The notes below the pieces were generated by a model. That model did not search any database. It saw only the letters and a list, made by a program, of their open reading frames with translations, and was not told where the DNA came from. Position numbers and translations under genes: made by a program. From NCBI RefSeq assembly GCF_006345805.1, contig NC_042997.1:34658001-34722000 (forward strand): a stretch of DNA of 64,000 bases, in the 5' to 3' direction. The DNA comes from Octopus sinensis (taxonomy: Eukaryota). Below are positions 2,621 through 30,752 of this stretch, piece after piece; positions within the stretch are counted from its first letter, which is position 1, and the number at the start of each line of letters is the position of its first letter.

Positions 2621-2934
2621 AGCAATGTACATTGATTTACATATTTAATCAAAAAGCGTTAGGCACATACGTATTCGTGTATTCGTCTGCAGGTCTTAGT
2701 CATTGTACTGCAGTTATGTTATACACACACATGCTCGTATATATATATATACTAGCATTAAAGACCCGTCGTTGCCGGGTCATAGTGCTAATGCATGTAT
2801 ATATATGTATATGTGTGTACATATTACATGTACATCTATATATATACATCTACACATAAAATGCAAAATACAAAGTTATATCTTGATATCGCTAGTGATA
2901 ACAATACTTAAAATATATAACAGACTGGAATTGC

Positions 2935-3241
2935 TAGCCCGTCTCTTGTAATTTCGATCAATTGCATCTTGTCCTCCCTCTTGTATAGAAGTGGGGCTAC
3001 AATCCAGCCTACCTCTACTTCTGGGGGGAAGGGGGGCATTTAATTTTTTTTTCCGGGACGTCCTACGTCCCAGATATAAAGATAAAAATAAAATATTTCC
3101 ACGTTGCAAGTTCGAGTCGAGTACTCCCTTGCACGCTCCGTTGACTCGAACCTTGCTTCTATTGTGGCGAATTTACCACCTCTGATTAGATACCTTTCAT
3201 AGTCGCACCAAAACACTTTTCGAAGGTGCTTTCCTCCATGT
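2935..3241 (-). pseudogene. Host Tx1-like element: 3' half of the interrupted ORF1
   Basis: Frameshifted translation MEESTFEKCFGATMKG/YLIRGGKFATIEARFESTERAREYSTRT/LQRGNILFLSLYLGRRTSR..LPP/EVEVGWIVAPLL aligns with IEEIEKCLGDIMKKATFVDRGKKYGTVEVRC..LKAENFTMWPTYKGRR..VPP of the ORF1 at 9212-10054. Confidence 0.8.
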
Positions 3242-3480
3242 GATTTTATTATTACCCACAAGGGGCGAACATAGATGGGACAATACAATCTGGGTCAGAC
3301 AAACGAATGGGTTTTTACAATAAATCGGATTTAAAAATTTTCATGAATTACAATAAATGGACAGAAATCGAATGATGGGACAGACCGGAAGACATTACGG
3401 GTGGAGTGGGTGCGGGTTTAGCTCGGACCCCACGAGCCCCGCCTCCCCACTGATACTTTTGGTTGCGCTTGGTATTACGT

Positions 3481-6400
3481 TTATGTTGTATCTTTCACTC
3501 GCAACTTTCGTGCTACATCCTTCCATCGTTCTTCATACACTCTCCTAGTCAGGCATATTCTCTCCAGCCCTATCTTCCTTTTCAGGTGAAAGATGAAATA
3601 ATTCATCAAACCAGGGCCGGAGATGAACTTGCCTGACTGTAAACCTTTCATTCTCGTCTTCCATATCACCTCTTTCGCAATTGCTACTACAACGAGAAAA
3701 CGAAACTTACCTTCATTCACGAGGAAATCCGGTGGGTCAATTTTTGTAATCGACTCAGTCGACAGCTGTACTCTTCGTGTACCTGACAACAGGTGTTCGG
3801 CATAAACCCACACCTCAGACACGTCCGGACAATGAACAATAGCGTGCAGGACGGTTTCCCTATCCCGCCCGCATCTTGGACATATCGGACTGTCTTGGCC
3901 ACCGTGCCTTGCGAGTTTATCCCGAACAGGTAGAGCTCCTCTGTAGCATTGCCATGCCAGAGACTTCTGGAAGTTGTCCAGTGTCCTCGGCTCGAACGTA
4001 CGTCGGAACAGACTGGCCAGCTGATTATCGTCGAGACCTAGGGTTTCCTCCAAGGTATCTTCACATTCCGCCTCTACCAACCCTCTATAGAGGAATGTGG
4101 TGGAACCCCCACCGCAGGCGTTGCCCGAGCGACGGAATAGCAGGAGAGCCTTGCGACACTCCGTGTACCAAGTACCAAGTTTCGATCTACGATTCAGCCA
4201 GGTTTCCCATCCACCGAAACTAGTGAACTTGGGAAACATCAGTTTTGCTAGCGAAGACCACACCCGTTCACCATCCAGGTAGAGCCACAGATGTCTTAAC
4301 CTCAGCGCATGTCTGCGCATCATCAGCCAAGGCATCCCTAGCCCACCCTTTAACGGTTGTTGACAGCAAGTAGAGCGTTTCACAAGTGGTTTCCCGCCCT
4401 TCCACAAGAAGTAGAAGAGCTGTCTTTCCAACTTGATCAACCACGAGTCAGGGCAAGGAACGACGGAAAGGCGGTAGGTGATAACCGATGCGATAAACAC
4501 ATTGGCCACCTCCGCCCTCCCTTTCAGGGATAGCCACCGCCAAGACCAGGTCTTGGCTACTGCAGCCACCTTGCTCGTTACCTCGCCCCAATTCTTCTCT
4601 ATTTGGAGGTCTGGACCGAACCAGACCCCTAGCAGTTTAATCGGACCCTCCGTCCAACGTCCCACGACGCTGTCAGGAGGCATCGACTTGCCTCTCCAGG
4701 TGCCGAGTTGCAAGCCGACTGACTTTTCGCGATTAACTTTTGCTCCTGTCACCGTCTCGTAAACCTCTATGGCCTTGCCTACTTTACATAGGTGGTCCAT
4801 TTCGGTTACGATGATGGTGATGTCATCCGCGTACGCTGACACTGATTTTCCATTACCTGGCTGTCTCGGGATGCCGCTCAGTTTTCGCAGTAATGGCTCA
4901 AGAGCCATCACGTACAAAAGCGGGGAGAGCGGACACCCTTGACGAACCGAGCGTTTGATTTTGAACGGCTTCGACAAGAAGCCGTTCACCCGAACTACCG
5001 AGTCGATGTTATCATAAATTTGGATAATCCACCTGAGGAAGCCAAGGCTCAGCCCGAACCGTGCCAGGGCAGATACCAGGTAACGATGGTCGACCCTATC
5101 AAAAGCTTTAGATTGGTCTAAATGGACCAGTGCCCCGCCCTTGCCAGAATCACTATTAAACCCCTCTATAGTGTACCGCATTAGATGGAGATTATCCTGA
5201 ATGGATCTGCCCGGAACGGCACATGTCTGTGCCTCTCCGATCAGACCATCCGCGACACGCGCCAATCTTTTCGATAACACTTTGGCCAAAATCTTCAACT
5301 CTGTGTTTAGCAGAGTGATGGGCCTGAAATTATCAATGCACTCCCCCTTGCTCGGGTCCTTTCTGACGAGAGTCACTACTCCCCGGCGCACAGATCTGGG
5401 TATAAGCCCGTTCTGCTGCCAGTTCGCATAGACCTCCGCCAGTAGGTGCCCGAACAAGTCTGGCATACTCTTATATAACTCATAGGGTAGACCATCCAAA
5501 CCCGGCGCCTTGCCCGCGCCGCAGTCCGCCATTGCCTCAAACACCTCCCCAGGCGTGATTGGCCCTTCACAGCCCTCCGCATCTCGCCCCGATAAGCGCG
5601 GCAGACCGTCGAGTAGGTCCGTAAAGGCCCTCCTCCTATCCAGTCCGCCGCACTCACCGAAAAGCTGAGCGAAGTGCTCCTGAAAGGCCTCACACATCTC
5701 CTCGGGTTCGTTTATCAACTCACCTTGTTGGTTCGTCAAAGATCGAATCGTGGCATCGTTACCATGCTGAGCTTCCACCACTCGGCCCATCTCACGGCGT
5801 TGATTCCTTCACATCCCATATGACGGATTCTAGCCCTGACAATGCAGCCCATGTGTTTGGCCTCGAGGTGCTGGTTTAACACCAGTCTCTTGGACGCCAC
5901 CTGAGCCGCAGAGCCAGTTTTCATGGCTTCCTCTAATTCCTTAACTAGAGTAGTTTCCCTTCTAGCCTCTCTAGCCACTACTCCTATGCTATATCTAATA
6001 GACTCAAACTTGATGGCTCGTTTGAGGGCGTACCACCATTTGTTATTAATGATGGTACCAGATAGTGCCCTCTGAATTATATTCCTAATCCGGTCTTTGT
6101 ACTCCTTAATCGCCAAAAGGGACGTATTAAGTTTCCAGTAACCGGATCCTCTATTTTTAACCTTATCTATGTCAAGCTTACAAGTGACCATTTTATGATC
6201 ACTGTAGCTGATCGGGTAAAACTGTGGGCACTTAGCTATTTTACTGTCTACTTTTCTAATTAGTATTCTATCTAAATATGACCTGGAAGATCCGTCGCTG
6301 TTTGACCATGTCCACAATGGAGCGTTCGGAAATTCCAGCCTATAAGGATCTGCTAGCTCAAAGCGGCTTAGCAGTTCCATGAAGCCACTGTTGCCTTTTC

Positions 6401-6877
6401 TATCTGGACACGAGCCAACATAATCTACATCCGCTTTGCAAATTGTGTTAAAGTCTCCTAGCACCACTAATGAATGCGAAGTACAAGAAAGCAGTTTTCT
6501 AGTTCACGAAAATAATCACTTTGCCCTGTATGGTTGGGTGCGTAAATTGCAACCAGTCTGATAACTTTACCATTACTGAACGTCAAATCCATGACGACCA
6601 GCCTACCTTCTGGATCTGCAAAAATTAACTTTTTCTCAGAAACCCGGTTTCTTTTTAATAGGACCAACACCCCACTCCCGCCTGTAGGACTGCCAGGAGA
6701 GAAAAAACTCTCGTAGCCGTCAAACAGCGGGAGTAGACCTCTTGGCCCCTCTAACCGGGTTTCTGTAGCAACAATAACATCTAAATTACGCGACCTGATG
6801 TCATGCAGGAAGCGACCTTGCTTCCAGCCTGCTCCCAGGCCGCGCACATTCAAACAACCAACATAAATGTAATCCAT
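3481..6877 (-). CDS. ORF2: APE endonuclease + reverse transcriptase + C-terminal CCHC zinc finger (~1130 aa after repairing two 1-bp frameshifts)
   Basis: EN motifs GCLNVRGL, ATETR, AIYAPN, LGDFN, YLDRI, YSDH. RT motifs NFRPITLLN, LDQSKAFDRVDH, RQGCPLSP, YADD. C-terminal CPRCGRDRETVLHAIVHC. Frameshifts near 6484 and 5784. Confidence 0.92.
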
Positions 6878-6885
6878 TGCTTACC

Positions 6886-8262
6886 TTATATCAGTGGTTC
6901 GGTTTTCTCTTGTTCTTCAAACTCTTTTTCTGGGCCTCGTGGGGGAGTCTGACGTAGGCCCTCGAATATATGTGGAGATGTTACATCCAACCTAAGTGGG
7001 CCTACGTCATGGAAGAATTCTGACTTTATCCGCCCGTAATCCCTCCGGTCTATTCTGTAAATTACAAAGTCATTTTTTTTTTCTACTTTCTCTACTTTGG
7101 CCATGGCTGCCAACACGTTTCCGAGTCTGCTATTTGATGCCTTTACGGCCATATATGCGTTCATTGACTCTTTTTTCTTTTTTAAAATTACTCTGGGAGG
7201 GGTGGTTTCCGTTTTTCTTTTTTTTTTTCCGATAATTTTTTCCCACCCTTCCTCATTTATCTTTTCCTCGCTCTTTTTTTTTTCCGCCGCTGGTTCTGCT
7301 GTCACCGTCACCTCCACACCTTCAGTCTTCCCTTCTGGGCCGTCTGACGCTGCTTCTGGTGACACATTGTCTTCTTTTTCTTTTGGCTTAGGTGCTTCCT
7401 GCGGTTTGGGTTGGGGTTGGCATTCCGCCCTTACATGCCCCTTCTTGCCGCAGCCGAAGCACCTCGGTTCCTGCCCTCCACGAACACTGTTATTTTCTCG
7501 TCTTCACTAATCTTTACCGTTTCTGGAATTTCTTCCAGTGTTTGCACCTCCGCCTGAATGGCTATCACTATTTTTGGCCTTTCCAAAAATCCTCTTCCTC
7601 CACTGTGGCCTGGAGGATGTTTATTTTTTCCTCCAGACCTACCATCACTGCTGCCACCAGACATTCATCATCAGCCTCTGGCGGTATGTTGTTCATTGAA
7701 ATTTTTGACGTCCTTTTTCCTTTATACAATGGTAGTAAGACAATGTTTTCCGCTTTGATCGGCTCCATCGATAGTTTCTTCGCTATATCCTCCGTAGTAA
7801 AACGCACCTCCACTGTGCCGTATCTTTTTCCTCTGTTTATATACGTTATTTTGTCCATAAACGGTTTTAGACAAGACTCTATTTTTTTTCTTCGATTTTT
7901 TGGATCATTTTTTTCGTTGTGTCGTAAGTTTTATATATTATTCTTTTTTTCTCTATATCGTCATGTATTTGTATGTTTGTGGCCACAGTCACTTCTGTGC
8001 CTTCTTTTTTTACGCAGTCTGCAAATTTTTTAAAATTGTCTATATTTATTTTTTTGATCTTTTTCCCAGCCACTTCAGCGAATTTTTTTGCTGGAGTTGA
8101 TGCTGGTACTGGTTTTTCCATTTTCTTGGGCGACGCCGCCTCTTTTTTCTTCGGCGACAACGCTTCTTTTTTTCTTGGCGACAACGCCTCTTTTTTACTT
8201 GGCGACAACGCCGGGTATTCATCCTCGCTCGTCACGGGCGAATAAGAGATGGGGGACTCCAT
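6886..8262 (-). CDS. ORF1 of unit 3 (~460 aa after repairing three 1-bp frameshifts): RRM-like region, CCHC knuckle, charged linker, C-terminal domain
   Basis: Joins ORF-track pieces 7879-8271, 7568-7858, 7431-7664 and 6886-7365. Knuckle CFGCGKKGHVRAEC at 7420-7461. Frameshifts at T8 7882-7889, T5 7571-7575 and TT 7468-7469. Confidence 0.88.
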
Positions 8263-8493
8263 CTTGAACAAATGGCTTTAACAAGCCTTTGGTAAATCCA
8301 AATTAATTGTAGTTTTCCCCCACTGAGGGGGGAACACCAACGCGAAGTCTTCGCGCGAAGGCTGACTTCGTCCGTTAGACAACAATAGACAAAAACAGGT
8401 AGACCAACAGTATATAATAACAGAGATAATAGTACGAGAGCAAAAAATATATATCAACTTACTAATAACGCAAAAAATTGCTTTCCTCCATGT

Positions 8494-10405
8494 TGTTTTA
8501 TTATTACCCACTAGGGGCTACATAGATGGGACAATACAATCGGGAAAATGAATAATGAGTTATGAAGTTTGTACAATGTGGTGCAATGCCCACTCGATCC
8601 CCGAAATCGAGCGGTTACATTTCGTCATTTATTTTTATTCGTCAACAATATTTTCAAATAAAACATTTTATACATTTTCAACATACATTTCAAAAAGTTT
8701 TACAAAGTTCAACATTTCTTTTTTTTTTTTTCCGAATTTAAAGTTCTTTTTATCATTTACAAATTAAAGTTTTCACAATACCTTTTCTTTTATATATACT
8801 CCATTATGTCTACCAAATCTGAGTAAATTTCCATCGTTCGAGGCCACCTTGGAAGTCGGCATTTCATATGTTTTAACACGTTCTTGCCAGCTGCCTCGAT
8901 GAACGCCTCGGCGTCGTTCTCGTGGACGAGTGCACCTGTTTCTTTCCATTCGGTGCCCATCCTGACCCACGTATATCCGTTTGTTTCGCTTATTAAATTT
9001 TCCATCTCCTCACAATGCTTGTGATGGATCAACGTTCCATAGTATTTGAATTTTCTATTCGTACCTGCGTTTTCTCTAGTTTTTCTCTTAGGACTTACTT
9101 CCTCTTTTTCTCCTCCCTCGGTTTCTCTCTTTCTCTCTTTTGCTTTCTCTTCTTTCTTTTTCCTTCTCTTGTCTTTTTGGCTCTTTGTCTGCCGTCTCTC
9201 TACCCTGTGCCTTAAGTTCCTTTCTGTTGTTTCTTTTCCTTTTTGCATACCATCTTTTCCTTTCTCTTGGTTCTGTTCCTTCTCTTGTTCTTTTCCTGCT
9301 TTTTCTCTTTCCTTAATGTACTTTCCTTTTCTTTCTCTTGCTTTTGCCTTGGCTCCTTCTCCTCTACTTCTGCACCCTGTGAATTTTGCTCCTTTTCTAC
9401 TATCTTCTTCCCTTTGTTTTCATTTTCCTTCAGTGCGCTGTTACTTCCCTTCTCTTGTTGTTTCTCCGTTATTTCCTTTTCCTTGTTTTCGCTGTTCTTT
9501 CCTTCGTGTTCGTTTTCCTTCTCTCCACTTGGTGTCTCTTTTTGCTCCGCTGTGAATTCATACAGCGGACATTCCTTTTTTATGTGCCCTCTTGAACCGC
9601 ACAGGTAGCAATTCGGTTTTCTGCCTTCCACTATTACACTAATTGTTTTTTCGTTTTCTATTTCTATTTGGAAGGGAAATCTTTCGATGTCTTCAATTGT
9701 GGCCATCAGCCACAACTCGACTCCGAATCCCTTCCAATTTACAACGTTCGTCTCCTTAATTGACCCTATTTCTACTTCCTCTTTTGCTGCTCCAATAATG
9801 GCTGTTACTAGCATTTCTGTTTTAATATTTGGGGGCACCTTTGGGACTCTTACCCGTACCCCTCGTCTTCCTTTATACGTCGGCCACATGGTGAAATTTT
9901 CCGCTTTCAGGACAGTGGAAGCCAATGAGGCCGCCACTTCCTTTGTTGCGCATCTCACCTCCACCGTACCATATTTCTTTCCTCTGTCCACAAAAGTCGC
10001 TTTTTTCATGATGTCCCCCAGACATTTCTCTATTTCTTCAATCGTCACTCTCACCAGTTTTCTCGTGTTTCTATCTTGCGTTCTATACGTTATCGTCTTG
10101 TTATTTTTTCTTCTATTGTTTCCACAGGCGGGACCAGCTTCACGCTGTCACCCTCCCTTTTGACGAACTTCTCGTATTCCTTCAATTGTTCTTTTCTAAA
10201 GAACACTTCTTTTATTCTAAGTGACTCGTCACTTTGTTGTGTGGCGACCCCCGCGTAAGTCTCCATGACTTGAGGGTCGACACACCTTCTATAAAAGGTT
10301 CAAACACGTAGCGGCAAACGCCTCGCGCGATTCAATTTTTGACAATTTTTAACAGTTTTTTTTCAATTTTCACATACAAAATAACTCACAACACATGTGG
10401 ATAGA
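8494..10405 (-). mobile_element. ORF1-only Tx1-like element (unit 2, HAL1-like) with intact LINE 3' tail and 12-bp TSD
   Basis: No EN/RT sequence. The 3' ~50 nt are nearly identical to the unit 3 tail. TTTCCTCCATGT at 8482-8493 and 10406-10417. Confidence 0.85.
8773..10266 (-). CDS. ORF1 of unit 2 (~500 aa after repairing about three 1-bp frameshifts)
   Basis: METYAGVATQQ... (ATG at 10266) joins 9212-10054 (knuckle CYLCGSRGHIKKEC at 9569-9610), 8790-9248 and 8773-8970. Confidence 0.85.
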
Positions 10406-10417
10406 TTTCCTCCATGT

Positions 10418-12077
10418 TATTTCTTTATTACCCACCAGGGGCTACGAAGAATGGCGGAACATAACAAAACATGGGAGACATAGAACAATATGATTAAATT
10501 TATGAGCAAATGAAAATGAAAAATGATAATATGAAAGCGATGCTAACGGCCCCCTCCGCCAGCATCACTTACCTGTCCTTTTGTTTTCACTGTCACCTGA
10601 ATGTTCATTCCCAATACGAAGACCATCCATATCCATTCTTACTCCGAAACTGTCCTCCATATATTCCACGAATTCATCGCTCATTCTTGTATCTTTCACC
10701 TCCCAATTCTCCCTTTCACACCTCAACACAAACTCATCTATATTATTTCTTTCCAGCACTGCATATCTGGTCCCATCCATTTCATACCATTCATACTCCT
10801 CCATTACCCTTTCAACCTCTTTCTGTTCAGTCACAATATAAATGTTCGGCCTGGGTTCGTTTTCAAACTCTTGTCTGTCTGTATTGTTATTTTTCTTTGT
10901 TTTTCTTGTTGGAGGGGAGCGGGTGGGTTCACGTCTGCAGGGGAAGGGTAGGATTCAGAGGGTGGGTGGTGTTGGGGTGGGTTGGGGCTTCGCACAGTTT
11001 TTCTTTTTCTTTCTTTTTTTCTCTTTTTTTTTCCTTCTTCCCACTCTTGTTGCATCTCCTCTTCTTCTGTCGTTTCTTTTTCCTTTGGTTCTCTTTGGTT
11101 TCTTCCTCTTTTGGGGCTTCCGCGACGATTTCCTTTTCTTTTTCCTTAGTGGTGGAGGGCAGTAGGCTCTTATGTGACCCCTCAGGCCACACTTGTAGCA
11201 CCTGGGCGCCTACCCTCCACCCACACTCTCATAATAATATTCCAGTTTTTATACTGTCCGTAAGCTTTTCTATAACTTCCGCCTCCGTCTGTATGTTCAT
11301 TACTAGTGTGGCACCTCTCACGCCTTCATATTCATAATGGCGTGGAGGATGTCCACTTTATCTTCATTTCCTTTGATAACCGCAGCCGTTATTAATTCGC
11401 CCTCTAGGTGTGGAGGTATTCCTTCACCCTAATTCTGGTGGTCCTTCTATTCAAATACGAGGGGAACAAGTAAACTTTTTGTACTCACCACCTTGGCTGC
11501 TATATTCCTGGCTGCTTTCTCACTTTTAAATTGTACCGTTATGGTTCCATATTCTAATCCTTTTGTCATGTACACAATTTCTTCTCCGTCCGTTTGAAAG
11601 CCTCTTCAATTCCTTCCATGTTAATCACTTCCATTTTTCTACCTCCATTCATAAATACTTTATATTTAATGGTTCTACGATGGAACCAGTCTCCGCGCCC
11701 TGCTAGAGGCAACAGCTCAACCTCTCCGTTCTCCTCCTCCTTCATGAACTCCTGGAAGTCCGTCAACTTAGCCAGGTCTATCTCTTTTTCTGTTGACTTC
11801 TTCGTTATACCTGCATAGGTGCTTTCCATTTTTTTCACCGCCAACTCCTCATCAGATGTCGACGAATTTTCAGAGAAATTTCTCCCTTCCATCTCATCCG
11901 TTTGGTAGAGGCGGCTCATAGTCGCCTCAGACCGAAAAACGGCCCCTCCCGAACAGAAAACGTGCGACGCACAGAACCAGTGCGACGCGAAACCGCACCA
12001 ACCGACGTTCCAATTCCGCAACCACAATTCACTTTTTGTTGTTTTTCTTTTTTAACGAATTTTACAGAGCGCAAAAA
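10418..12077 (-). mobile_element. ORF1-only Tx1-like element (unit 1, HAL1-like) with LINE 3' tail
   Basis: ORF1 is followed by a ~145-nt 3' UTR ending GTAGCCCCTGGTGGGTAATAAAGAAA. No ORF2 sequence. Confidence 0.8.
10565..11919 (-). CDS. ORF1 of unit 1 (~450 aa, many 1-bp frameshifts as assembled)
   Basis: MSRLYQTDE..TIKYKVF../YMTKGLEYGTITVQFKSEKAA../PSYLNRRTTRIRVK/IPPHLEGELITAAVI../knuckle CYKCGLRGHIRAYC at 11159-11200/..EYEWYEMDGTRYAVLE.. Confidence 0.78.
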
Positions 12078-12190
12078 AACGCGACCTTTTTTCTCTACAT
12101 TGTATACTTTATAGACAATAGTCTTTTCTTTAATTTAATTTTTTATTATCCATCTGGACTATTCCATTTCTGCACGCTAATTTTATTTCA
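12078..12190 (-). pseudogene. Host Tx1-like element: 5' half of the interrupted ORF1
   Basis: 12134-12078 translates to IKEKTIVYKVYNVEKKGRV, matching IEKKRIIYKTYDTTKK (unit 3) and RRTIKYKVF (unit 1). It joins MEESTFEKC at 3239 with the conserved Tyr-to-Cys spacing of 21 residues. Confidence 0.7.
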
Positions 12191-12387
12191 ATTTATTCCC
12201 ATTCATGTGAAACCACTTACTCAAGTTCAAGTCATTGATGCAATTTTATACCAATTGCTATTTTTACTTTTGTTATGTTACTACATATAATTCAATTGTT
12301 ATTATTATTTTTATTGTTAAAGTGAAAGTATTTGACATAAAATAGAGAAATGTTTTTGTTTCACTTTTAAAACGTAATACTGAAATA

Positions 12388-12724
12388 GTGGAGAAGATAT
12401 GATATTGCTATGGGCTCGCTCTATGCAAGAAGTTGAACATTTCTTTTTGCCCATGAGACTACATGAAACCTAAGTAAGGCATGTGTAAAATTTGAATGGA
12501 ATTGGTTGTGTAGTTCTCAAGTTTTAGGGAATCGTAGTGGAGAAGATATGATATTGCTGTGGGCTAGCCCTTGGCAAAAAGTTCAAAACTCTTTTTGCCG
12601 ATGGCACTCCCCGGACCCGAAGTAAGGCATGTATAAAATTTAAATGAAATTGGTTGTGTAGTTCTCAAGTTTTAGGGAAACACACAGACAGACAGACACT
12701 TTCTCAGTTTTATATGTATAAAGA
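12388..12724 (-). mobile_element. Non-autonomous Helitron-like element, 5' part, with a ~149-bp internal tandem duplication
   Basis: Minus strand begins A|TCTTTATACATATAAAACTG..GTCTGTCTGTCTGTGTGT. The repeat unit 'gtggagaagatatgatattgc' occurs at 12388 and 12537. No 3' CTAG end seen. Confidence 0.55.
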
Positions 12725-12787: not shown

Positions 12788-12925
12788 ATATATTATATAT
12801 ATATATAATATATATATTATATATATAACGGGAAGCTTTATGAAAATAGACAAAAGACGAAGGCAGGTGGAAAACAAACAAACAATTGTATTAGTATGGC
12901 GCTCAGGAAGTATAAATAAAACAAG

Positions 12926-12963
12926 TCTTTAACGTTTCGAGCCTACGCTCTTCAACAGAAAGA
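12926..12963 (-). ncRNA. Minimal hammerhead-like motif (core CUGUUGA)
   Basis: TCTTT-CTGTTGA-A-GAGC-GTAG-GCTC-GAAAC-GTTA-AAGA. Confidence 0.55.
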
Positions 12964-13980
12964 TACACAGAGAGAAAAAAACACAGAAAGAAGGAGAGAA
13001 AAAAAATGCGTGCAGTAACTAACGAACCAACATGGCGATCTGATTTCGGCCAGAAGTCAAAGATCAAGCATGAGACGCGAGAGCGAAATTAGGGGAGATA
13101 ATAGGGTTGAGTGACCAGCTCCAACATAAGGGTGTGTGTGTGTGTGTGTGTATGAGAGAGTATTAGTGCGTATGAGAGGTCTGGACGTGTGTATGTATAG
13201 GGTTGGTGTATGTATTAGTATGTATTAGTATGTATTAGTACGTATTAGTATGTATAAGGGTGTGTGTATGAGAGAGTATTAGTGCGTATGAGAGGTCTGG
13301 ACGTGTGTATGTATAGGGTTGGTGTATGTATTAGTATGTATTAGTATGTATTAGTTGGTGTATGTATTAGTATGGCACATCATATATGATGTGATGTGTA
13401 AAGTCGTGTGGTGGTAGTGTGGAGAGAGAGGAGAAGAGGGGAGGAGGAAGGAGGGGGAGAGAGGGGAGGGGGAGAAGGAAGGAGGAACGGGGGAGAGGGG
13501 GAGAGAGAAGGGGAGTGAGGGAGCAGAGGGAAGGGGAAGAGGGAAGGAGGGAGGGAGAAAGAGGGAAGAAGGCAAGGGGAGTAGGGGTGAAAGGATGAAG
13601 GACTGAAGAATTAGGGGTCGGGGGGGAAGTAGGAGAGGGGTTAGATGAGGAGGGGGGGGAGAGTTGAGACCAAATGGCGTATAAGAGCGAAGAGAGAAGA
13701 TTAATTCCTGTTCACGGCGCAAACGGGACTCCGGATGGCCTCTGTGTAAGGACAAACCGAACACAGATAGGTGTTGCAAGGAGTGACCGGTGGAGCGGAA
13801 ATGGCGAGAGACCGGTGTGTCGTTCGCAAGGTGGATGTCACGAAGGTGTTCCGCGAACCGGTATATATATATGTATATATATAACGGGAAGGTTTACGAA
13901 AATAAACAAAAGACGAAGGCAGGTGGAGTACAAACAAACAATTGTATTAGTATGGCGCTCAGGAATAGAAATGAAACAAG

Positions 13981-14018
13981 TCTTTTACGTTTCGAGCCTA
14001 CGCTCTTCGACAGAAAGA
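13981..14018 (-). ncRNA. Minimal hammerhead-like motif (core CUGUCGA)
   Basis: TCTTT-CTGTCGA-A-GAGC-GTAG-GCTC-GAAAC-GTA-AAAGA, with perfect stems I and II and palindromic ACGT stem III. Confidence 0.6.
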
Positions 14019-14312
14019 TACACAGAAAAGAAACAAGGAGAGAAACAAGGAAAGAAAGATAATATATGAGAAAATAAAACGAAAGGGACAGTTTATACGA
14101 ACAAATCCAAGGTTAAAAATGTATAGACGTCGTGGTATATTTTAAGGATTTCACATCAATAACAAAGTCACTTTGATCCGTGAAGTGCAGCCAGAAGGTA
14201 GGTGTCCTTAGAGGTAAGAAAATCCAATGGAGAGGTAGTGGTACTGGTAGAATATAGCATAAAAGCGTGATCACGTGAGCGCGTGATATATAACGGGAAG
14301 GTTTATATATAT

Positions 14313-15579: not shown

Positions 15580-17103
15580 TATAACCTCCACATCGTGCAA
15601 ATGATGTATCGGTCACCGCGGTGCTGGAGAGGATAGAGTTTCAATGCTATAAGGCAGTCTCAATGATCATGATCAGTCATGCCCTTTATTCTTTTAGTCA
15701 ATGAACTCTGAGGTGATTCAATTTTAGATATGTTTTGTTTTGTATGGGGAGACCATAGGGGGCAGCGGTATTCGAGATGTAGCTGTTCAAAGGACGAGAA
15801 AAGAGGAATCATGGTATCTTGTTCTCTGGGCCGGAAGGTGCATAGGATATCCAGGAGCTCATCCTTCGACCTATATCGACTTTATTGTTTGAGTGAGCAC
15901 TCCAGCTGACTTTGTTATCAACAATCACTCTAAGTTCTCTGATATTATTAGATGCCCTGAAGAAAGAGAGTATGGCTGTTTCAGCATAGTCTTTTTTCCA
16001 AATTTTCCCTCGTTTTAGTTGCATTTTCTTTTTGTCAACCCATTGACTCTCAGCATGTAGATCAGAATGGAGTTCAGTTCGGTCTTCTTCTCCATTGATA
16101 ATTTTCTGGAGCTTGGAGTCATCAACGAATATTTTTACTTTACTGTATTTTATGACGCTAGAAAGGTCAAATATGTAGACTATAAAGAGTAGCTAGCCCA
16201 AGACAGTAGCCTGATGGACACCACTGGTGACTTTTGCTGGGCTTGAGTGGATTCCACCGATCACAATACTCAATCCAGTGTAGTAGTTTCCCACGGATTC
16301 CAACATTTGACAATTTTGACTGTAGGATATTATGGTCAACTCTGTCGAACGCTCTACTGAAGTCAAGATATATGACATCAGATTTCGAATCTGATCCCAA
16401 GGCTAAAAGGATATCATCAATAAGAGCTGAGTTGGACAGTCCCTGCCGCAGCGAAAGCTATGCTGGTTTGACATTAGGAGATTGAGGCTTTCCAGGAAGC
16501 CAGCTATCCTTGATCACACCACCCTTTCAAACACTTTAATAATATGGGAGGTGAGTGAGATTGGGTGATAGTTGACTGCGAGGGATCTGTTTCCCTGTTT
16601 GAAAAACGGGATAACAAACTGGGATAAGAGCTGTTTCGGTGTATAACCTGAGTCTAAAAAATTTCTCTAGAAGTTGGTCAGAGGACTGCAAGTTGGTACC
16701 TACATTCCTTCAGGAGACTAACGGGGAATCTATCAGGGCCCACAACAGAATAGTATTTGATCTTATTTATTGCTGCTATGATGTGTGAAGCAATAATGGT
16801 GATGTCCGAGATTATATGCTGGGAAACGATTTCGTTCACTTCACTTGCGTCAATATCAGTGGGATCACTAAAGACAGAGCAGTATTGTTTCTGCAGTACT
16901 CTTTACTCTTTTACTTGTTTCAATCATTTGACTGCGGCCATGCTGGAGCACCACGACCCCGGGACTTATTCTTTGTAAGCCCAGTACTTATTCTATCGGT
17001 CTCTTTTGCCGAACCGCTAAGTGACGGGGACGTAAACACACCAGCATCGGTTGTCAAGCAATGCTAGGGGGACAAACACAGACACACAAACACATACACA
17101 CAA

Positions 17104-17140
<37 letters not shown>

Positions 17141-18540
17141 CATATATACGACAGGCTTCTTTCAGTTTCCGTCTACCAAATCCACTCACAAGGCATTGGT
17201 CGGCCCGGGGCTATAGCAGAAGACACTTGCCCAAGATGCAACGCAGTGGGACTGAACCCGGAACCATGTGGTTGGTTAGCAAGCTACTTACCACACAGCC
17301 ACTCCTGCTATTTCTTTAGCATCGTTATGGTGAATGCCGTTATCATCGATAAATGGACCACTGGGTGAGATGGCGGCCCTTTGCTTATTTGCATATGACT
17401 AGAACACTTTTGGTCTCTGTTTGATTATTTTGATTACCCACATTTCTTCTGCAACTCTTTGATTTTCAATTCAGGTTCTCATGTTGGTCTGCAGATAAAG
17501 CTTTTCCAACTCCAGCCTTTTCATTGTTGTTGAATGTAGATGTTGTATGTAGGAGTATTTTAATTGGTTGATTATTTTTATTAAGTCTTTTGGGGTGCCT
17601 GATGAGTGTTCTTTTTCTCTCTTGGAAGCCAGTTTCCGTTTGTGTTAGTGGATTTCATAGGAGCATGTCTTGAGCATGTGTATGTGACAATGTCCTCAAA
17701 GTACTGCCACGTGGCTTCAATGTCAGTGGAGCTGAGAGTGAAAGACCAGTCGATAAAGGACAGGTCATTTGTGCTTGCTCCCCACTCAGCTTTGTGGAAG
17801 TATATGTTGTCAAATAAGTGCTGTGGAGTGTGACTGGCTGGTTTGGTTTTGATACGGCGGAAATAAATGCTGTAGAGTATCATGTTGTTGTCTGAGAGGA
17901 GAATCTTTTCAATTGAAATCCTGTGAATGGAGCTTGAGTGGTTTATTAATATTAGATCCAAGATCCTTTTATTCTGTCTTGTTGGTTCGAGCACTAGCTG
18001 TGTCAGGAAAAATTCATCCATTAGATTAAAGAGTAATTCTGTTGCTGCTTTGTCTGGTGTAGTGAAGTTGCATAACTTCAGAATATTTGTGAGCTAGTTT
18101 ACATAAGGGAGGTTTAAATCACCCATAATTGTATGTTTCCAGAGTCGGAGTTTTAATAGAAGGACTTGATTTTGTTGAGGCATTCTTCAAAGCACTTTAG
18201 AGGTTCTTAGGGAGACCCGTAGAGACCAACATTGATTATGTCGTTGGCCTTGTAGTGATATGGATTCACAGTAACCATTTGAAAATATGTCCTTGGCATC
18301 AACTGAAAAAGAGTCATGGAGAAAGATAGCTGTTCCTCCTTTATTTCGGTTTGTGCAATTTTCACGGATGATGGTGAATTTTTTAATTTTGACTGTAGGA
18401 TATTATGGTCAACTCTGTCGAACGCTCTACTGAAGTCAAGATATATGACATCAGATTTCGAATCTGATCCCAAGGCTAAAAGGATATCATCGATAAGAGC
18501 ATGGCATCCATGTGAGTGCTGTTTAGGTAAGTTTTAGTAA
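15580..18540 (-). mobile_element. Decayed CR1-clade LINE (EN and RT remnants) with a nested SINE
   Basis: MGDLNLP, FLTQLVLEPTRQNKRILDLIL, GPDRFPVSLLKEC, DVIYLDFSRAFDRVDH, VTSGVHQATVLG, IFVDDSK, YRCPLWSPH. Many stops and frameshifts. Confidence 0.85.
16898..17308 (-). mobile_element. Full-length SINE family A with internal (TA)/(TG) microsatellite, nested in CR1
   Basis: Head, CORE-like part, microsatellite and 3' part 'ggtgctccagcatggccgcagtcaaatgattgaaacaagtaaaag' are all present. Confidence 0.85.
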
Positions 18541-28118: not shown

Positions 28119-29647
28119 AATGAATCATTGTTTAAAAATAGTTATCGCTTACCTACGAAGCATGACCGGAATATTGTAAATATAATCTATAGCTAATCCA
28201 GAGGATACAGCTGTGTAGAGATCATAATCACTCATGATATAAATAACACTGGTGGAATGTTCCTGTCAGAATGAGAAACATAATGCAAGCCAAACAGATC
28301 AGAGCCAATGATCCTGGATGGCGGAAAGAAATTATGCATAGTAGTGGAACCCTGATGCCCAGTAATATGGTCACAGTGTTACAGATTCATGAAAAGAAGA
28401 CATCATTGCTGAATTAATGAGATATCTTCAGTAACTTTCTCCAGACAAGGAATTTATTTATGTGCCGATAATCATTGTAGGACATGGACACATGACTAAA
28501 TTTATCAGCCCATATCTTTCAGAGCCTGAGGTTTAAAGGAAAAAAATTAAATAGAAGAATATGAAGAACACGGCTAATTAGAAAACTACAGAGGGCACCA
28601 GTTACTAATTTCATTCAAAGAATATGTGGAACATACAGGAGGTTTAGCATGCAGTAATTGAACATACACATGCACAGCATAAACATGCAAACAGGTCAAC
28701 CCATACAGGTCCACTTAAGTTATATGAATGCTTAAACATAATTGTGCGTGTACATAGATACGTACATATTTGCAAATAGCATAAAAGATGACGACATTGA
28801 TGTTTAAATTCTAATGGAAAAGAGTTGTATCTCACTAAACCTACCACTATTTCCATTTTATGAGAAATTAAAAGCAAAACAAACCAAATAAGTATACACG
28901 AATATTCATGCATGTACGTAGAATCATATATAGATGACAGATGTGCATTAAGTTATTTAAATAATTTAGAAGAGTTTTTGAATATAAATAGTATGTTTAT
29001 TGTCTCATTCCGTGAAACATTTATCATGCTAACGCAACCTGTAACTTTTCCACTTTCAGCACTTTTGTAATTCCTTTTCTTCTGTAGATGATATGCTTTA
29101 GAGAACAAATATCTTAACACCCGTTTGTCATTTATGAACATTAGAATTTATGATATTGTTGGAGATCTATCTAGGCTTTTCCTTTGCACGATTCAAAAAA
29201 AAATTTTAATAGTTTCTGCCAAAGTAGCTTCTGGTATTTGTGTGTATGTGAAGCTTTTACGTATGCATATGTGTTGGTACTTATGCGAATAAACATGCAT
29301 TCATGTAATATAGCCCTTTATGAAATTTAAGTACACAAGTATGTGCTACAATAATGTTTATGTATAAATGTGTTCACGCACGTATGCATGTGTGTGTGCT
29401 TATATGCACATGCAATTAACTGCACATTTTTATCCTGGAAAATCAAGTGGAAAATTGCTGGATTTTTATGAAATGATCACTGTACTACTAATCGATTGCA
29501 TCTAAAGAATGCAAACCTGTTTGCTTTGTCTTTTCTTAATCCCTACATTACATTTCTCATTAGCTCGCCAGAAATCTATATTTCTTTAATTTAAATGAAT
29601 GTTCTACTTCAGCTGGTAAGGTGGACTTTAAATCATCATTTCTATTA

Positions 29648-30195
29648 TAGAGGCACAAGGCGTGAACTTTATGGGAGGAGGGCTAGTCGATTTCATTGAC
29701 TCCAGTGTTCAAGTGGTACTTACTTAATCGACCCCGAAAGGATGAAAGACAAAGTCTACCCCAGCGGAATTTGAACTCAGAACGTAGCGACAGGCGAAAT
29801 ACCGCTAAGCATTTCGTCCAGTGCGCTAACGATTCTTATTTCTTTACTGCCCACAAGGACACAAACAAGGACAGATAAACGGATTAAGTCGATTATATCG
29901 ACCCCAGTGTGTAACTGGTACCGCTAAGCATTTCTGCCAGCTCGCCGCCTTCGACAGGCGAAATGCCTATTTCTTTACTACCCACAAGGGGCTAAACACA
30001 GAGAGGACAAACAAGGACAGACAAACGGATTAAGTTGATAATATCGACCCCAGCGCGTAACTGGTACTTATTTAATTGACCCCAAAAGGATGAAAAGTAA
30101 AGTCGACCTCGGCGGAATTTGAACTCAGAACGTAACGGCTGACGAAATACAGCTAAGCATTTCGTCCAGTGCGCTAACGTTTCTGCCAATTCGCC
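29648..30195 (-). mobile_element. Cluster of three family C SINEs (29648-29833; internally deleted 29836-29948; complete 29968-30195)
   Basis: Repeated 'gaatttgaactcagaacgta', 'gctaagcatttc' and 'aaacggattaagt' blocks. The latter two copies have a tail resembling the Tx1 3' end. Confidence 0.8.
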
Positions 30196-30752
30196 GACTT
30201 TGATAATGCACGTATTTTCTTTGCTGAGCCAATGAAAAATATCATACTTAAAGCGTCTCTTCTAATTTGCTGTACATTCCTTCAAATATTTCACCGAGAA
30301 TATTCATTTTTAATGCCGCGAATGTATTAATGACACAGCGGACATTTTTATCGAAAAATGGAATTTAAGAGGTATCCACCTACTTTTGAGCAAGTATTTA
30401 GTTGCTTACTTCTCCGAAAGTACATCATTCTAGGTGAGATGTGATATATTTCTCATGAATCATGGAGAATTTACTCTTCTTACTAATGTTATCGACATTA
30501 ATTTCCTTGCAAGAAATGCACTCATGCATAAACTTCTGTTGATTTGATGATATTCTCCTCCAGGATTCTTTATAAGTAGGTTGTCTTCTAATCTCACTAT
30601 GTTGTTTATAATGCTGTATACACATGATACACACGTAGTCTATGTATATTTGCATGTATATATTAATGCCTATATGTCTGTAGCTATTCCTCCATCCATC
30701 CATCCACTCCTTTCACTCCCTGTCTGTCTCTGTCTCTCTCTTTCTGTGTCTG

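What the first reader, a model, noticed from the sequence alone, without database searches (positions are those of the whole stretch)
3227..10417. Stacked 12-15 bp target-site duplications suggest an insertion order
TTTCCTCCATGT occurs identically at 3230-3241, 8482-8493 and 10406-10417, each time 2 nt after a LINE A-rich tail. It extends to 15 bp for unit 3. Unit 1 has no upstream copy; its junction is blunt within about 1 nt in a T-run. Inference: each new element used the regenerated downstream target, giving the order unit 1, then unit 2, then unit 3. This fits unit 1 carrying the most frameshifts and unit 3 the longest perfect TSD. Such a self-regenerating site would allow an array to keep growing, loosely analogous to R2 or HeT-A/TART arrays.
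Basis: partly seen in the sequence, partly recalled or inferred. Interest (0 to 1): 0.75.

Follow-up and report, generated by a model that had tools for sequence, protein, structure and literature searches.

The report
Head-to-tail octopus retrotransposon array
The repeated 12-base motif is the shared first 12 bases of related octopus retrotransposons stacked head-to-tail at one spot, so it marks where each element starts and cannot by itself date the insertions as an ordinary target-site duplication would.

Summary
TTTCCTCCATGT occurs exactly three times, each directly after the 3' tail of a minus-strand non-LTR element, and the match is 15 nt around the full LINE.

The motif is not an anonymous duplicated target. 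In 226 kb of Octopus vulgaris loci, ACATGGAGGAAA occurs five times. Four start the same LINE family on four chromosomes. One starts the short element (U0) that follows the last copy in the window. One of those LINEs has the motif at its 5' end but not after its tail.

The stacking idea still survives in a modified form. Sister arrays show array-specific 10-17 nt duplications of the downstream unit's first bases, including one in front of a heavily 5'-truncated fragment. The window LINE's 13th base matches U0, not its own family.

Best reading: new copies integrate at the tail|next-unit junction and duplicate the neighbour's start. That start coincides with the incoming element's own homologous terminus.

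Unit 1 is clearly the oldest. The order of units 2 and 3 is unresolved. The array lies inside a Helitron-like repeat that carries similar arrays at six or more other loci. I rate it a new variant of a known kind, of moderate interest.

The parts
12086..12724 (-). X: 5' arm of a Helitron-like host repeat. Its 5' end (TCTTTATAC..) abuts a (TA)n tract. It ends ..ACAATGTAGAGAAAAAAG at 12086, directly against Unit 1.
   Evidence: Homologous to the sequence immediately upstream of arrays in L004, L005, L007, L010, L012 and L013. The common 5' boundary (TA)n|TCTTTATATATATAAAACTGAG is seen in six loci. The window lacks the last ~11 nt (AAGA..AAC) that the other copies have.
10418..12085 (-). It is 5'-truncated (lacks ..ACGTGTTTGAGTTCG and the terminal module), heavily decayed, and its tail ends ..GGGTAATAAAGAAATA.
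   Evidence: ORF1 homology to Units 2 and 3. Three-frame translation shows many stops. At least 10 in-frame stops against 389-402 aa reference ORFs. Full 5' end of relatives in L006.
10406..10417 (-). 12-mer copy 3 (ACATGGAGGAAA): the first 12 nt of Unit 2.
   Evidence: Its last 4-5 nt are contiguous with Unit-2 family sequence in L006 (GAAATCTACCCACGTGTGTTGTGAG). U4 relatives start ACATCGAGGAAAT...
8494..10405 (-). Its tail ends ..GGGTAATAATAAAACA.
   Evidence: zf-CCHC hit. 93-97% DNA identity to four O. vulgaris copies. Two frameshifts and 0 stops against an intact 504-aa ORF in L006.
8479..8493 (-). 12-mer copy 2 plus GCA (ACATGGAGGAAAGCA): the first 15 nt of Unit 3.
   Evidence: Four other family copies read ACATGGAGGAAATCAATTTTTTGCG. 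The window copy has G at nt 13, as U0 does.
3242..8478 (-). ORF1 is at ~8271-6886 (interrupted). ORF2 is at 6877-3481 (APE, RT, zf-RVT; 2 frameshifts). The 3' tail is at 3242-3300.
   Evidence: Pfam RVT_1, zf-RVT and Exo_endo_phos hits. Covers residues 1-1121 of 1148-aa relatives. 97.7-99.1% aa identity to an intact 1130-aa ORF2 in L013. Best PDB matches are human L1 ORF2p, E=1e-47.
3230..3241 (-). 12-mer copy 1: the first 12 nt of the short element U0 (ACATGGAGGAAAGCACCTTCG..).
   Evidence: The same start is seen in the L013 copy of U0, again directly after a Unit-3 tail.
2948..3229 (-). U0 body: a ~294-nt non-coding unit, probably a short non-autonomous relative. Its 3' part resembles the tail region (GATTGTA..CCCA..TCTAT) and it ends ..GATCGAAATTAC.
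   Evidence: 93% identical copy in the same position in L013. Absent from L004, L005 and L012. Element status is inferred, not shown.
2752..2947 (-). F: 3' arm of the Helitron-like host. It comprises AAGAGACGGGCTAGCA (2947-2932), a single uninterrupted ATTCCAGTCT (2931-2922), and a hairpin GACCCGGCAACGACGGGTC followed by TTTAATGCTAG ending at 2752, then (TA)n.
   Evidence: In L004, L005 and L012, ATTCCAGTCT is the motif repeated at array junctions.

Best explanation
The window, from an Octopus (O. vulgaris or a close relative), holds a minus-strand head-to-tail array of four related non-LTR retroelements. They lie inside a Helitron-like repeat.

The four elements, in element sense:
- Unit 1: an old, 5'-truncated ORF1-only element.
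- Unit 2: a young ORF1-only element.
- Unit 3: a young full-length APE/RT LINE.
- U0: a ~0.3-kb short unit.

The families share two termini. One is a 3' tail (small hairpin plus AAUAAA-like end), which the local tRNA-type SINE also uses. The other is a 5'-terminal module that begins ACATGGAGGAAA.

Shown: the three 12-mers are therefore the starts of Unit 2, Unit 3 and U0, each butted directly against the previous tail.

Inferred mechanism: new copies integrate by target-primed reverse transcription at the nick that separates a resident tail (or the host edge) from the first base of the next unit. The second-strand nick falls 10-17 nt downstream, so the first bases of the downstream unit are duplicated. 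Because the incoming cDNA ends with the complement of a homologous terminus, it can anneal to that overhang. Duplication and native 5' end then merge into one 12-15-mer. Each full-length insertion recreates a tail|terminus junction, so arrays can keep growing. Arrays are further spread and reshaped by Helitron copying and local tandem duplication.
For: Native terminus:
- Exact ACATGGAGGAAA occurs only 5 times in 226 kb of O. vulgaris loci. Four start Unit-3-family LINEs on four chromosomes and one starts U0.
- The motif is conserved even where the rest of the 5' UTR has diverged (L006).
- U4 relatives start with 1-3-mismatch variants.

Not part of the tail:
- SINE copies in the window and an Argonauta hians relative end at ..AAAGAAAT(A/C) and are followed by unrelated DNA. 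The Argonauta element has a 14-17-bp host TSD.

Junction reuse with duplication:
- L013 has the private 17-mer ACATGGCTCCAAGCTAT in front of both U4 and Unit 3.
- L006 has GAAATCTACCCACGTGT three times, once in front of a Unit-1 fragment that starts at position 1346.
- ATTCCAGTCT occurs three or four times in L004, L005 and L012, but once and uninterrupted in the window.
- The same Unit-2 family carries different first 10-20 nt in different arrays.
- The window's Unit 3 has G13 like U0, against T in 4 of 4 other copies.

Sequential, not simultaneous:
- Unit 1 has at least 10 stops, while Units 2 and 3 have only 2 frameshifts each.

Families are probably active:
- Intact ORFs of 504 aa (Unit 2), 424-426 aa (U4) and 1130 aa (Unit-3 ORF2) exist elsewhere.

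Precedent:
- Double insertion with the duplicated target kept in the tandem junction is documented for R1, P and jockey (PMC5932611).
Against: - No solitary full-length copy flanked by host TSDs was recovered, so 'native terminus' and 'duplicate of a neighbour's terminus' cannot be cleanly separated for Unit 2.
- The G13 argument rests on one base.
- No duplication is visible upstream of Unit 1. The host lost ~11 nt there instead.
- In L007 and L008 the U4 units carry a different variant from the adjacent Unit-3 copy, so not every unit copies its downstream neighbour.
- The duplicated motifs (ACATGG.., ATTCCAG.., GAAATCT..) share no sequence, so what directs the nick is unknown.
- Shared Helitron flanks mean that some apparently independent arrays may be copies of one ancestral array.
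- All comparison loci were found through Unit-2-like proteins, which biases the sample toward arrays.
Confidence: 0.6

Rival explanations
1. Reader's model as written. ACATGGAGGAAA is an ordinary genomic target. Each insertion duplicated it, and each new element used the regenerated downstream copy, giving the order Unit 1, 2, 3.
For: The three copies are identical, with sharp boundaries on both sides, whereas the adjacent functional tail is only ~90% conserved. There is a 15-nt identity around Unit 3. A related Argonauta element makes 14-17-bp TSDs. Unit 1 is the most decayed.
Against: The 12-mer starts the Unit-3 family at four other loci and starts U0 in L013. The L006 Unit-3 copy has it at the 5' end but not after its tail. 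There are only three copies for three or four units, and none upstream of Unit 1. The downstream 'flank' is itself a repeated unit (U0), not unique DNA.
Confidence: 0.08
2. One-step concatemer. A single TPRT event started on U0 RNA. The reverse transcriptase then jumped end-to-end onto the 3' tails of Unit 3, Unit 2 and Unit 1 RNAs. Each unit keeps its own native 12-mer and no duplication is involved.
For: All internal units are full length to the first base, and only the 5'-most unit is truncated. Tails abut starts with no spacer. Template jumping is a documented property of non-LTR reverse transcriptases; this rests on the literature list and on established knowledge of R2.
Against: Unit 1 is far more decayed than Units 2 and 3, which argues for different ages. 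Array-specific duplicated motifs sit in front of truncated fragments in L006 and in L004/L005. G13 of Unit 3 matches U0. L013 shares Unit 3-U0 but has a different upstream unit.
Confidence: 0.15
3. Inherited block. The array was seeded once and copied around the genome inside the Helitron-like host, or by segmental duplication. Unequal crossing-over and gene conversion then reshaped it. The identical 12-mers reflect homogenisation rather than insertion mechanics.
For: Seven arrays share the same X/F host with Helitron-type ends in (TA)n. L013 has the same Unit 3-U0-F arrangement. U4 arrays show blocks of 99.2-99.8% identical neighbours.
Against: This does not explain how tail|start junctions arise in the first place. 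Arrays of the same kind exist outside the host repeat (L006, L009, L011). U4 units that are ~99% identical within L008 have different 5' junction sequences. Units 1 and 2 are specific to the window locus.
Confidence: 0.15

Closest known systems
TE tandems formed by double insertion at one site, with the duplicated target kept in the junction (R1 arrays with a 33-nt rDNA duplication; P-element and jockey dimers; McGurk & Barbash 2018, PMC5932611)
   Same: Head-to-tail units are separated by, or begin with, a short duplicated sequence. The site is regenerated by each insertion. Arrays can then expand by unequal exchange.
   Different: Here the duplicated sequence is the 5' terminus of a resident element of the same superfamily, so it merges with the newcomer's own end. 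Arrays mix an autonomous LINE with several ORF1-only families. No rDNA-type fixed target is involved.
Drosophila telomeric HeT-A / TART / TAHRE arrays
   Same: Mixed head-to-tail arrays, all in one orientation, of Gag(ORF1)-only non-autonomous elements with autonomous LINE relatives.
   Different: The O. vulgaris arrays sit at internal chromosome coordinates (for example 12.6 of 118.9 Mb and 64.2 of 225.7 Mb). There are no poly(A) junctions. The 5' ends are mostly intact rather than eroded. The arrays are short (3-9 units) and embedded in another transposon.
ORF1-only LINE derivatives (mammalian HAL1)
   Same: Units 1, 2 and U4 keep an ORF1 homologue (intact 424-504 aa ORFs in O. vulgaris), lack ORF2, and share termini with the autonomous partner.
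   Different: They belong to a different clade. They carry an extra C-terminal domain. They are arranged in tandem arrays upstream of the LINE.
Stringent-type LINE/SINE partnerships with a shared 3' stem-loop tail (for example eel UnaL2/UnaSINE1)
   Same: A LINE, ORF1-only elements and a tRNA-type SINE all end with the same ~40-65-nt tail, with no poly(A).
   Different: Here the 5' terminus is shared as well, and the copies cluster head-to-tail.
Composite Tx1L-in-Tx1D elements of Xenopus and other target-specific L1/Tx1-clade LINEs
   Same: A LINE with APE, RT and a zinc knuckle is found repeatedly at one position of another repeated transposon.
   Different: Clade membership was not established here. 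Helitron copying may explain part of the recurrence. Arrays also occur outside the host repeat.

Membership tests
Stacked target-site duplications (double or multiple insertion at one site) | The junction motif is copied from the sequence that lay downstream of the nick before insertion. | tested here: inconclusive
   The motif equals the first 12-15 nt of the downstream unit U0, which has the same start in L013. G13 of Unit 3 matches U0 rather than its own family. However, the same 12 nt are also native to the Unit-3 family.
Stacked target-site duplications (double or multiple insertion at one site) | There are n+1 copies of the motif for n inserted elements. | tested here: not met
   There are three copies. 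None lies upstream of Unit 1, even with up to 4 errors allowed. The weak ACAATGTAGAGAAA match is ancestral host sequence present in all host copies.
Stacked target-site duplications (double or multiple insertion at one site) | The motif is absent from the family consensus and differs between loci for the same family. | tested here: not met
   The Unit-3 family begins with the identical 12-mer at L006, L007, L008 and L010. This feature is met only for the Unit-2 family, whose first 10-20 nt differ between arrays.
Stacked target-site duplications (double or multiple insertion at one site) | Sister arrays show the same duplication in front of 5'-truncated units, with a single copy at an unoccupied site. 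| tested here: met
   L006 has a 17-mer three times, including before a fragment starting at position 1346. ATTCCAGTCT is repeated in L004, L005 and L012 and is single in the window at 2922-2931.
APE-type non-LTR retrotransposon (L1/Tx1-like architecture) | ORF2 with an N-terminal apurinic-like endonuclease, a reverse transcriptase and a C-terminal zinc knuckle, plus an ORF1 with a CCHC motif. | tested here: met
   Pfam Exo_endo_phos, RVT_1 (1e-31), zf-RVT and zf-CCHC hits. Full-length alignment to 1143-1148-aa ORF2 proteins. Human L1 ORF2p is the best PDB match. Clade (L1-Tx1 or CR1) was not determined.
APE-type non-LTR retrotransposon (L1/Tx1-like architecture) | A poly(A) or A-rich simple-repeat 3' end. 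| tested here: not met
   The elements end in a conserved hairpin plus AATAA(A/T)AAA(N)N, not in poly(A).
HeT-A/TART-type telomeric arrays | Arrays form the chromosome terminus. | tested here: not met
   All ten O. vulgaris loci are at internal coordinates of 41-226-Mb records. The window array is flanked by a Helitron-like repeat and unrelated DNA on both sides.
HeT-A/TART-type telomeric arrays | Head-to-tail mixed arrays of Gag-only and autonomous elements. | tested here: met
   The window has Unit 1 | Unit 2 | Unit 3 | U0. L007 has eight U4 copies followed by Unit 3. L010 has four U4 copies followed by Unit 3.
Site-specific LINE (R1/R2/Tx1L type) | Independent insertions at the same nucleotide of a repeated target. 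| tested here: inconclusive
   Seven arrays lie within ~20 bp of one position in the same host repeat. The host may have been copied with a seeded array. Arrays also exist outside it (L006, L009, L011).
ORF1-only non-autonomous LINE derivative (HAL1-like) | An ORF1 homologue is present, ORF2 is absent, and the 3' end is shared with an autonomous partner. | tested here: met
   ORF1 identity is 21-39% between units. There is no RT or APE between ORF1 and the tail. The tail is shared. Intact ORFs are found in O. vulgaris.
Helitron (the host repeat X..F) | A 5' TC end, a 3' CTRR end preceded by a hairpin, and insertion between A and T without a TSD. | tested here: met
   (TA)n|TCTTTATA.. is seen in six loci. 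The hairpin GACCCGGCAACGACGGGTC followed by TTTAATGCTAG|(TA)n is seen in the window, L005 and L013. No Rep/helicase gene was looked for, so a non-autonomous copy is assumed.

The most novel reading that the evidence does not exclude
Octopus genomes harbour a consortium of one autonomous LINE and several protein-coding ORF1-only 'satellite' elements that share both termini. They deliberately build internal, non-telomeric head-to-tail arrays by homing to the tail|5'-terminus junction of resident copies. Homology between the incoming cDNA end and the neighbour's terminus is used to complete full-length integration. This would be a HeT-A/TART-like array lifestyle uncoupled from telomeres, and it hitch-hikes on a Helitron for dispersal.
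Probability: 0.35. Interest if true: 0.7.

Novelty: new variant of a known kind. Interest (0 to 1): 0.5.

Why it matters
If junction homing is real, it gives a concrete, testable route from dispersed LINEs to tandem arrays and possibly to satellites. It also offers an example, outside Drosophila telomeres, of Gag-only elements co-arrayed with their autonomous partner. In addition, it provides a natural system for asking how the 5' end of a LINE insertion is joined, which is the least understood step of TPRT.

In practical terms, identical short repeats at LINE junctions should not be read as TSDs, or used to order insertions, until the family termini are known.

For octopus genomics, these arrays and their Helitron carrier are likely to be mis-annotated as genes. 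Several ORF1-only copies are already in the O. vulgaris protein set as 'uncharacterized protein'.

Tried and rejected
1. The 12-mer as the 3' end of the elements. Rejected: SINE copies in the window and the Argonauta relative end before it, and O. vulgaris tails are followed by other motifs.

2. My interim conclusion after L004/L005 that the 12-mer is purely target-derived. Revised once L006-L013 showed that it natively starts the Unit-3 and U0 families.

3. A fourth, degenerate copy upstream of Unit 1. The only candidate (ACAATGTAGAGAAA at ~12103) is host sequence present in all host copies.

4. Known RNA genes or 5' self-cleaving ribozymes at the unit starts. Rfam at gathering and at E<=5, and ARAGORN, found nothing relevant.

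5. 5'-3' panhandle complementarity between the 12-mer and the tail. No better than shuffles.

6. A metagenome scan for tail+12-mer. The single hit is a ciliate nanochromosome (C4A4/G4T4 ends) and is a chance match.

7. A homologue search with the N-terminal ORF1 piece of Unit 3, aimed at finding solitary LINE copies. No hits.

8. Dating from frameshifts alone. Several lie in homopolymer runs and could be assembly errors, so I relied on in-frame stops and on identity to intact relatives.

9. LINE clade assignment (L1-Tx1 or CR1). Not achievable with the named hits available.

Full report
**Observation**

TTTCCTCCATGT occurs exactly at 3230, 8482 and 10406 and nowhere else in the window at up to 1 mismatch. 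Chance expectation is 0.31. The identity is 15 nt (TGCTTTCCTCCATGT) at 3227-3241 and 8479-8493.

All coding capacity in 3.2-12.1 kb lies on the minus strand:
- A full-length LINE. ORF1 is at ~8271-6886. ORF2 is at 6877-3481 with APE, RT and zf-RVT. It covers residues 1-1121 of 1148-aa relatives with two frameshifts.
- Two ORF1-only elements at 10405-8494 and ~12085-10418, whose ORF1s are 21-39% identical to the LINE's.

In element sense the layout is:
[Unit 1 ..GGGTAATAAAGAAATA] ACATGGAGGAAA [TCTATCC.. Unit 2 ..AATAAAACA] ACATGGAGGAAAGCA [ATTTTTTGCG.. Unit 3 ..AATAAAATC] ACATGGAGGAAAGCA CCTTCG...

At DNA level the three units share only a 40-67-nt 3' tail.

**The motif is not part of the 3' tail**

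The same tail ends tRNA-type SINE copies at 29.8-30.0 kb, which are followed by other sequence.

The closest named relative of ORF2 is from Argonauta hians, at 58% identity. It ends ..GGCTAATAAAGAAATCTAT and is flanked by a 14-17-bp host duplication, (T)ATTTTTAAAATTTGTA.

**Related loci**

A search with the Unit-2 ORF1 found Octopus vulgaris proteins at up to 89% identity. I fetched ten loci of assembly GCA_951406725.2, on eight different chromosome records.

These loci contain copies of Unit 2 (93-97% identity), of Unit 3 (up to 97% over its full length and 98.5% for a fragment) and of a related ORF1-only family that I call U4 (72% to Unit 2). Nearly all lie in head-to-tail arrays. The window is therefore from O. 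vulgaris or a close relative.

**The 12-mer is a native 5' terminus**

In 226 kb of these loci, exact ACATGGAGGAAA occurs five times.
- Four are the first 12 nt of Unit-3-family LINEs (ACATGGAGGAAATCAATTTTTTGCG..) in L006, L007, L008 and L010. They sit behind U4 tails or, in L006, behind ..CCTTGAAC.
- The fifth is the first 12 nt of a 93%-identical copy of the ~294-nt sequence that follows the last 12-mer in the window. I call this unit U0 (window 3241-2948). In L013 it again sits directly behind a Unit-3 tail.

In L006 the LINE's 5' UTR has diverged, yet its first 25 nt are unchanged. The tail of that same copy is followed by ACGTGTTTGAG.., not by the 12-mer.

U4 copies start with close variants: ACATCGAGGAAAT.. 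in L008 and L010, and ACGTGTCGGAAAT.. in L007.

The one difference is that none of the copies is solitary.

**Junction duplication is nevertheless real in the sister arrays**

- In L013, a private 17-mer (ACATGGCTCCAAGCTAT) begins both the U4 unit and the Unit-3 LINE behind it. U0 in the same array keeps ACATGGAGGAAAGCACC. This needs local copying from one unit to its neighbour. The most parsimonious order is LINE first, then U4 inserted at its upstream edge.
- In L006 (+ strand), GAAATCTACCCACGTGT follows three successive tails. One of these precedes a Unit-1-type fragment that starts at position 1346 of the element. That copy cannot be a native 5' end.
- In L004, L005 and L012, each unit is preceded by ATTCCAGTCT, including at the host edge. 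That gives n+1 copies in L005. The window carries the same host sequence uninterrupted, with one ATTCCAGTCT at 2931-2922.
- The Unit-2 family is 93-97% identical in its body but carries quite different first 10-20 nt in different arrays.
- In the window, Unit 3 has G at nt 13, like U0. The four other family copies have T.

**Synthesis**

Shown: the three 12-mers are the first bases of Unit 2, Unit 3 and U0. Tails and starts abut without a spacer.

Inferred: integration occurs at the nick between a resident tail (or the host edge) and the first base of the next unit. The staggered second nick duplicates that unit's first 10-17 nt. Because the families share the terminal module, the cDNA end can pair with the overhang. 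Duplicate and native terminus then become one.

It removes the idea that the 12-mer is a neutral target whose copies and lengths record the order.

It matches the documented 'double insertion' route to TE tandems, as in R1 with a 33-nt rDNA duplication and in P and jockey dimers (PMC5932611).

What positions the nick is unknown. The duplicated motifs differ between arrays (ACATGG.., ATTCCAG.., GAAATCT..), so the constant feature is the upstream tail or host edge.

**Order of insertion**

- Unit 1 has at least 10 in-frame stops against 389-402-aa reference ORFs.
- Unit 2 has two frameshifts and no stops against an intact 504-aa ORF.
- Unit 3's ORF2 is 97.7-99.1% identical to an intact 1130-aa ORF in L013, with two frameshifts.

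It is also 5'-truncated, and the host lost ~11 nt at that junction. U0 predates Unit 3. The order of Units 2 and 3 cannot be decided. L013 shows that additions also occur at the upstream edge of an array.

The age difference argues against a one-step concatemer made by template jumping. That model does fit the pattern of full-length internal units with a truncated first unit.

**Context**

The array sits inside a ~0.9-1.2-kb repeat (arms X at 12086-12724 and F at 2752-2947) that has Helitron hallmarks:
- (TA)n|TC.. at the 5' end in six loci.
- A hairpin plus ..CTAG|(TA)n at the 3' end in three loci.

Seven arrays lie at nearly the same position in copies of this repeat. This could reflect target preference, copying of a seeded array by the Helitron, or both. 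Arrays also occur outside the repeat, in L006, L009 and L011.

Within the long U4 arrays, neighbouring units are 99.2-99.8% identical in blocks, so local tandem duplication also contributes.

**Literature**

The recent O. vulgaris repeat annotation lists active L1-Tx1, CR1, RTE and Dong-R4 LINEs and abundant Helitrons. It does not describe such arrays (PMC13282606). Searches of the held library found no description of them.

**Verdict**

I classify this as a new variant of a known kind, with interest 0.5.

Noticed in passing
window 2752-2947 and 12086-12724 (minus sense); L004, L005, L007, L010, L012, L013: The array is nested in a Helitron-like non-autonomous element. It has a 5' TC and a 3' hairpin plus CTAG, and is inserted in (TA)n. 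Copies on at least six other chromosome sites carry LINE/ORF1-only arrays at almost the same internal position.
   Followed up: partly
L007 4269-18506; L008 1-8857; L010 3787-10849; L013 5312-7083: There are tandem arrays of 1 to at least 8 copies of an ORF1-only element (U4, ~1.78 kb, intact 424-426-aa ORFs), always directly upstream of a Unit-3-type LINE. Several copies are annotated as 'uncharacterized protein' genes in O. vulgaris.
   Followed up: partly
window 29640-30250 (minus strand); also L006 30033/30217 and L011 15241/15425: Three tRNA-type SINE copies lie head-to-tail with no spacer. The same tail|GG(C/T)ATTTCG.. and tail|AGAATCG.. junction points recur in O. vulgaris loci. This suggests that composite SINE multimers propagate as units or form by the same junction mechanism.
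   Followed up: partly
window 2948-3241: U0 is a 294-nt non-coding unit that starts with the LINE 5' terminus. Its 3' part resembles the LINE tail region, and it contains two strong palindromes. It is possibly a SINE-like deletion derivative. It is conserved at 93% in L013.
   Followed up: partly
L001 (Argonauta hians) 12016-12650: The Argonauta LINE relative carries two tandem copies of its 3' UTR and tail, separated by ~130 nt, inside a single 14-17-bp TSD. This indicates either 3' transduction or a second insertion at the tail.
   Followed up: no
L009 8261-8300 and 10285-10330: Two successive tails are each followed by AGAAACGT(C/T)AGCACGCCG, which is the SINE head sequence. One instance begins an ORF1-only element and the other begins a SINE. 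This hints at how SINE heads and LINE bodies become joined.
   Followed up: no
L011 1-5345 and 26612-31929: Another array of related elements, with a different 5' motif (..CATCGATACTC), lies between two large hemocyanin genes (Tyrosinase/Haemocyan_bet_s domains).
   Followed up: no
window 16272-16436 and 18198-18497 (minus frames): There are short, diverged reverse-transcriptase fragments of other LINE copies (30-44% aa identity to ORF2 relatives).
   Followed up: no
window 12386-12531 / 12535-12679; 12808-13000 / 13863-14056: There is a 146-bp tandem duplication inside the host arm X (85% identity), and a ~190-bp dispersed repeat pair (90% identity).
   Followed up: no
window 6480-6497, 5790-5800, ~10100, ~9230: The frameshifts in Units 2 and 3 fall in or near homopolymer runs. 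They may be assembly errors rather than real mutations, in which case both copies could be intact.
   Followed up: no
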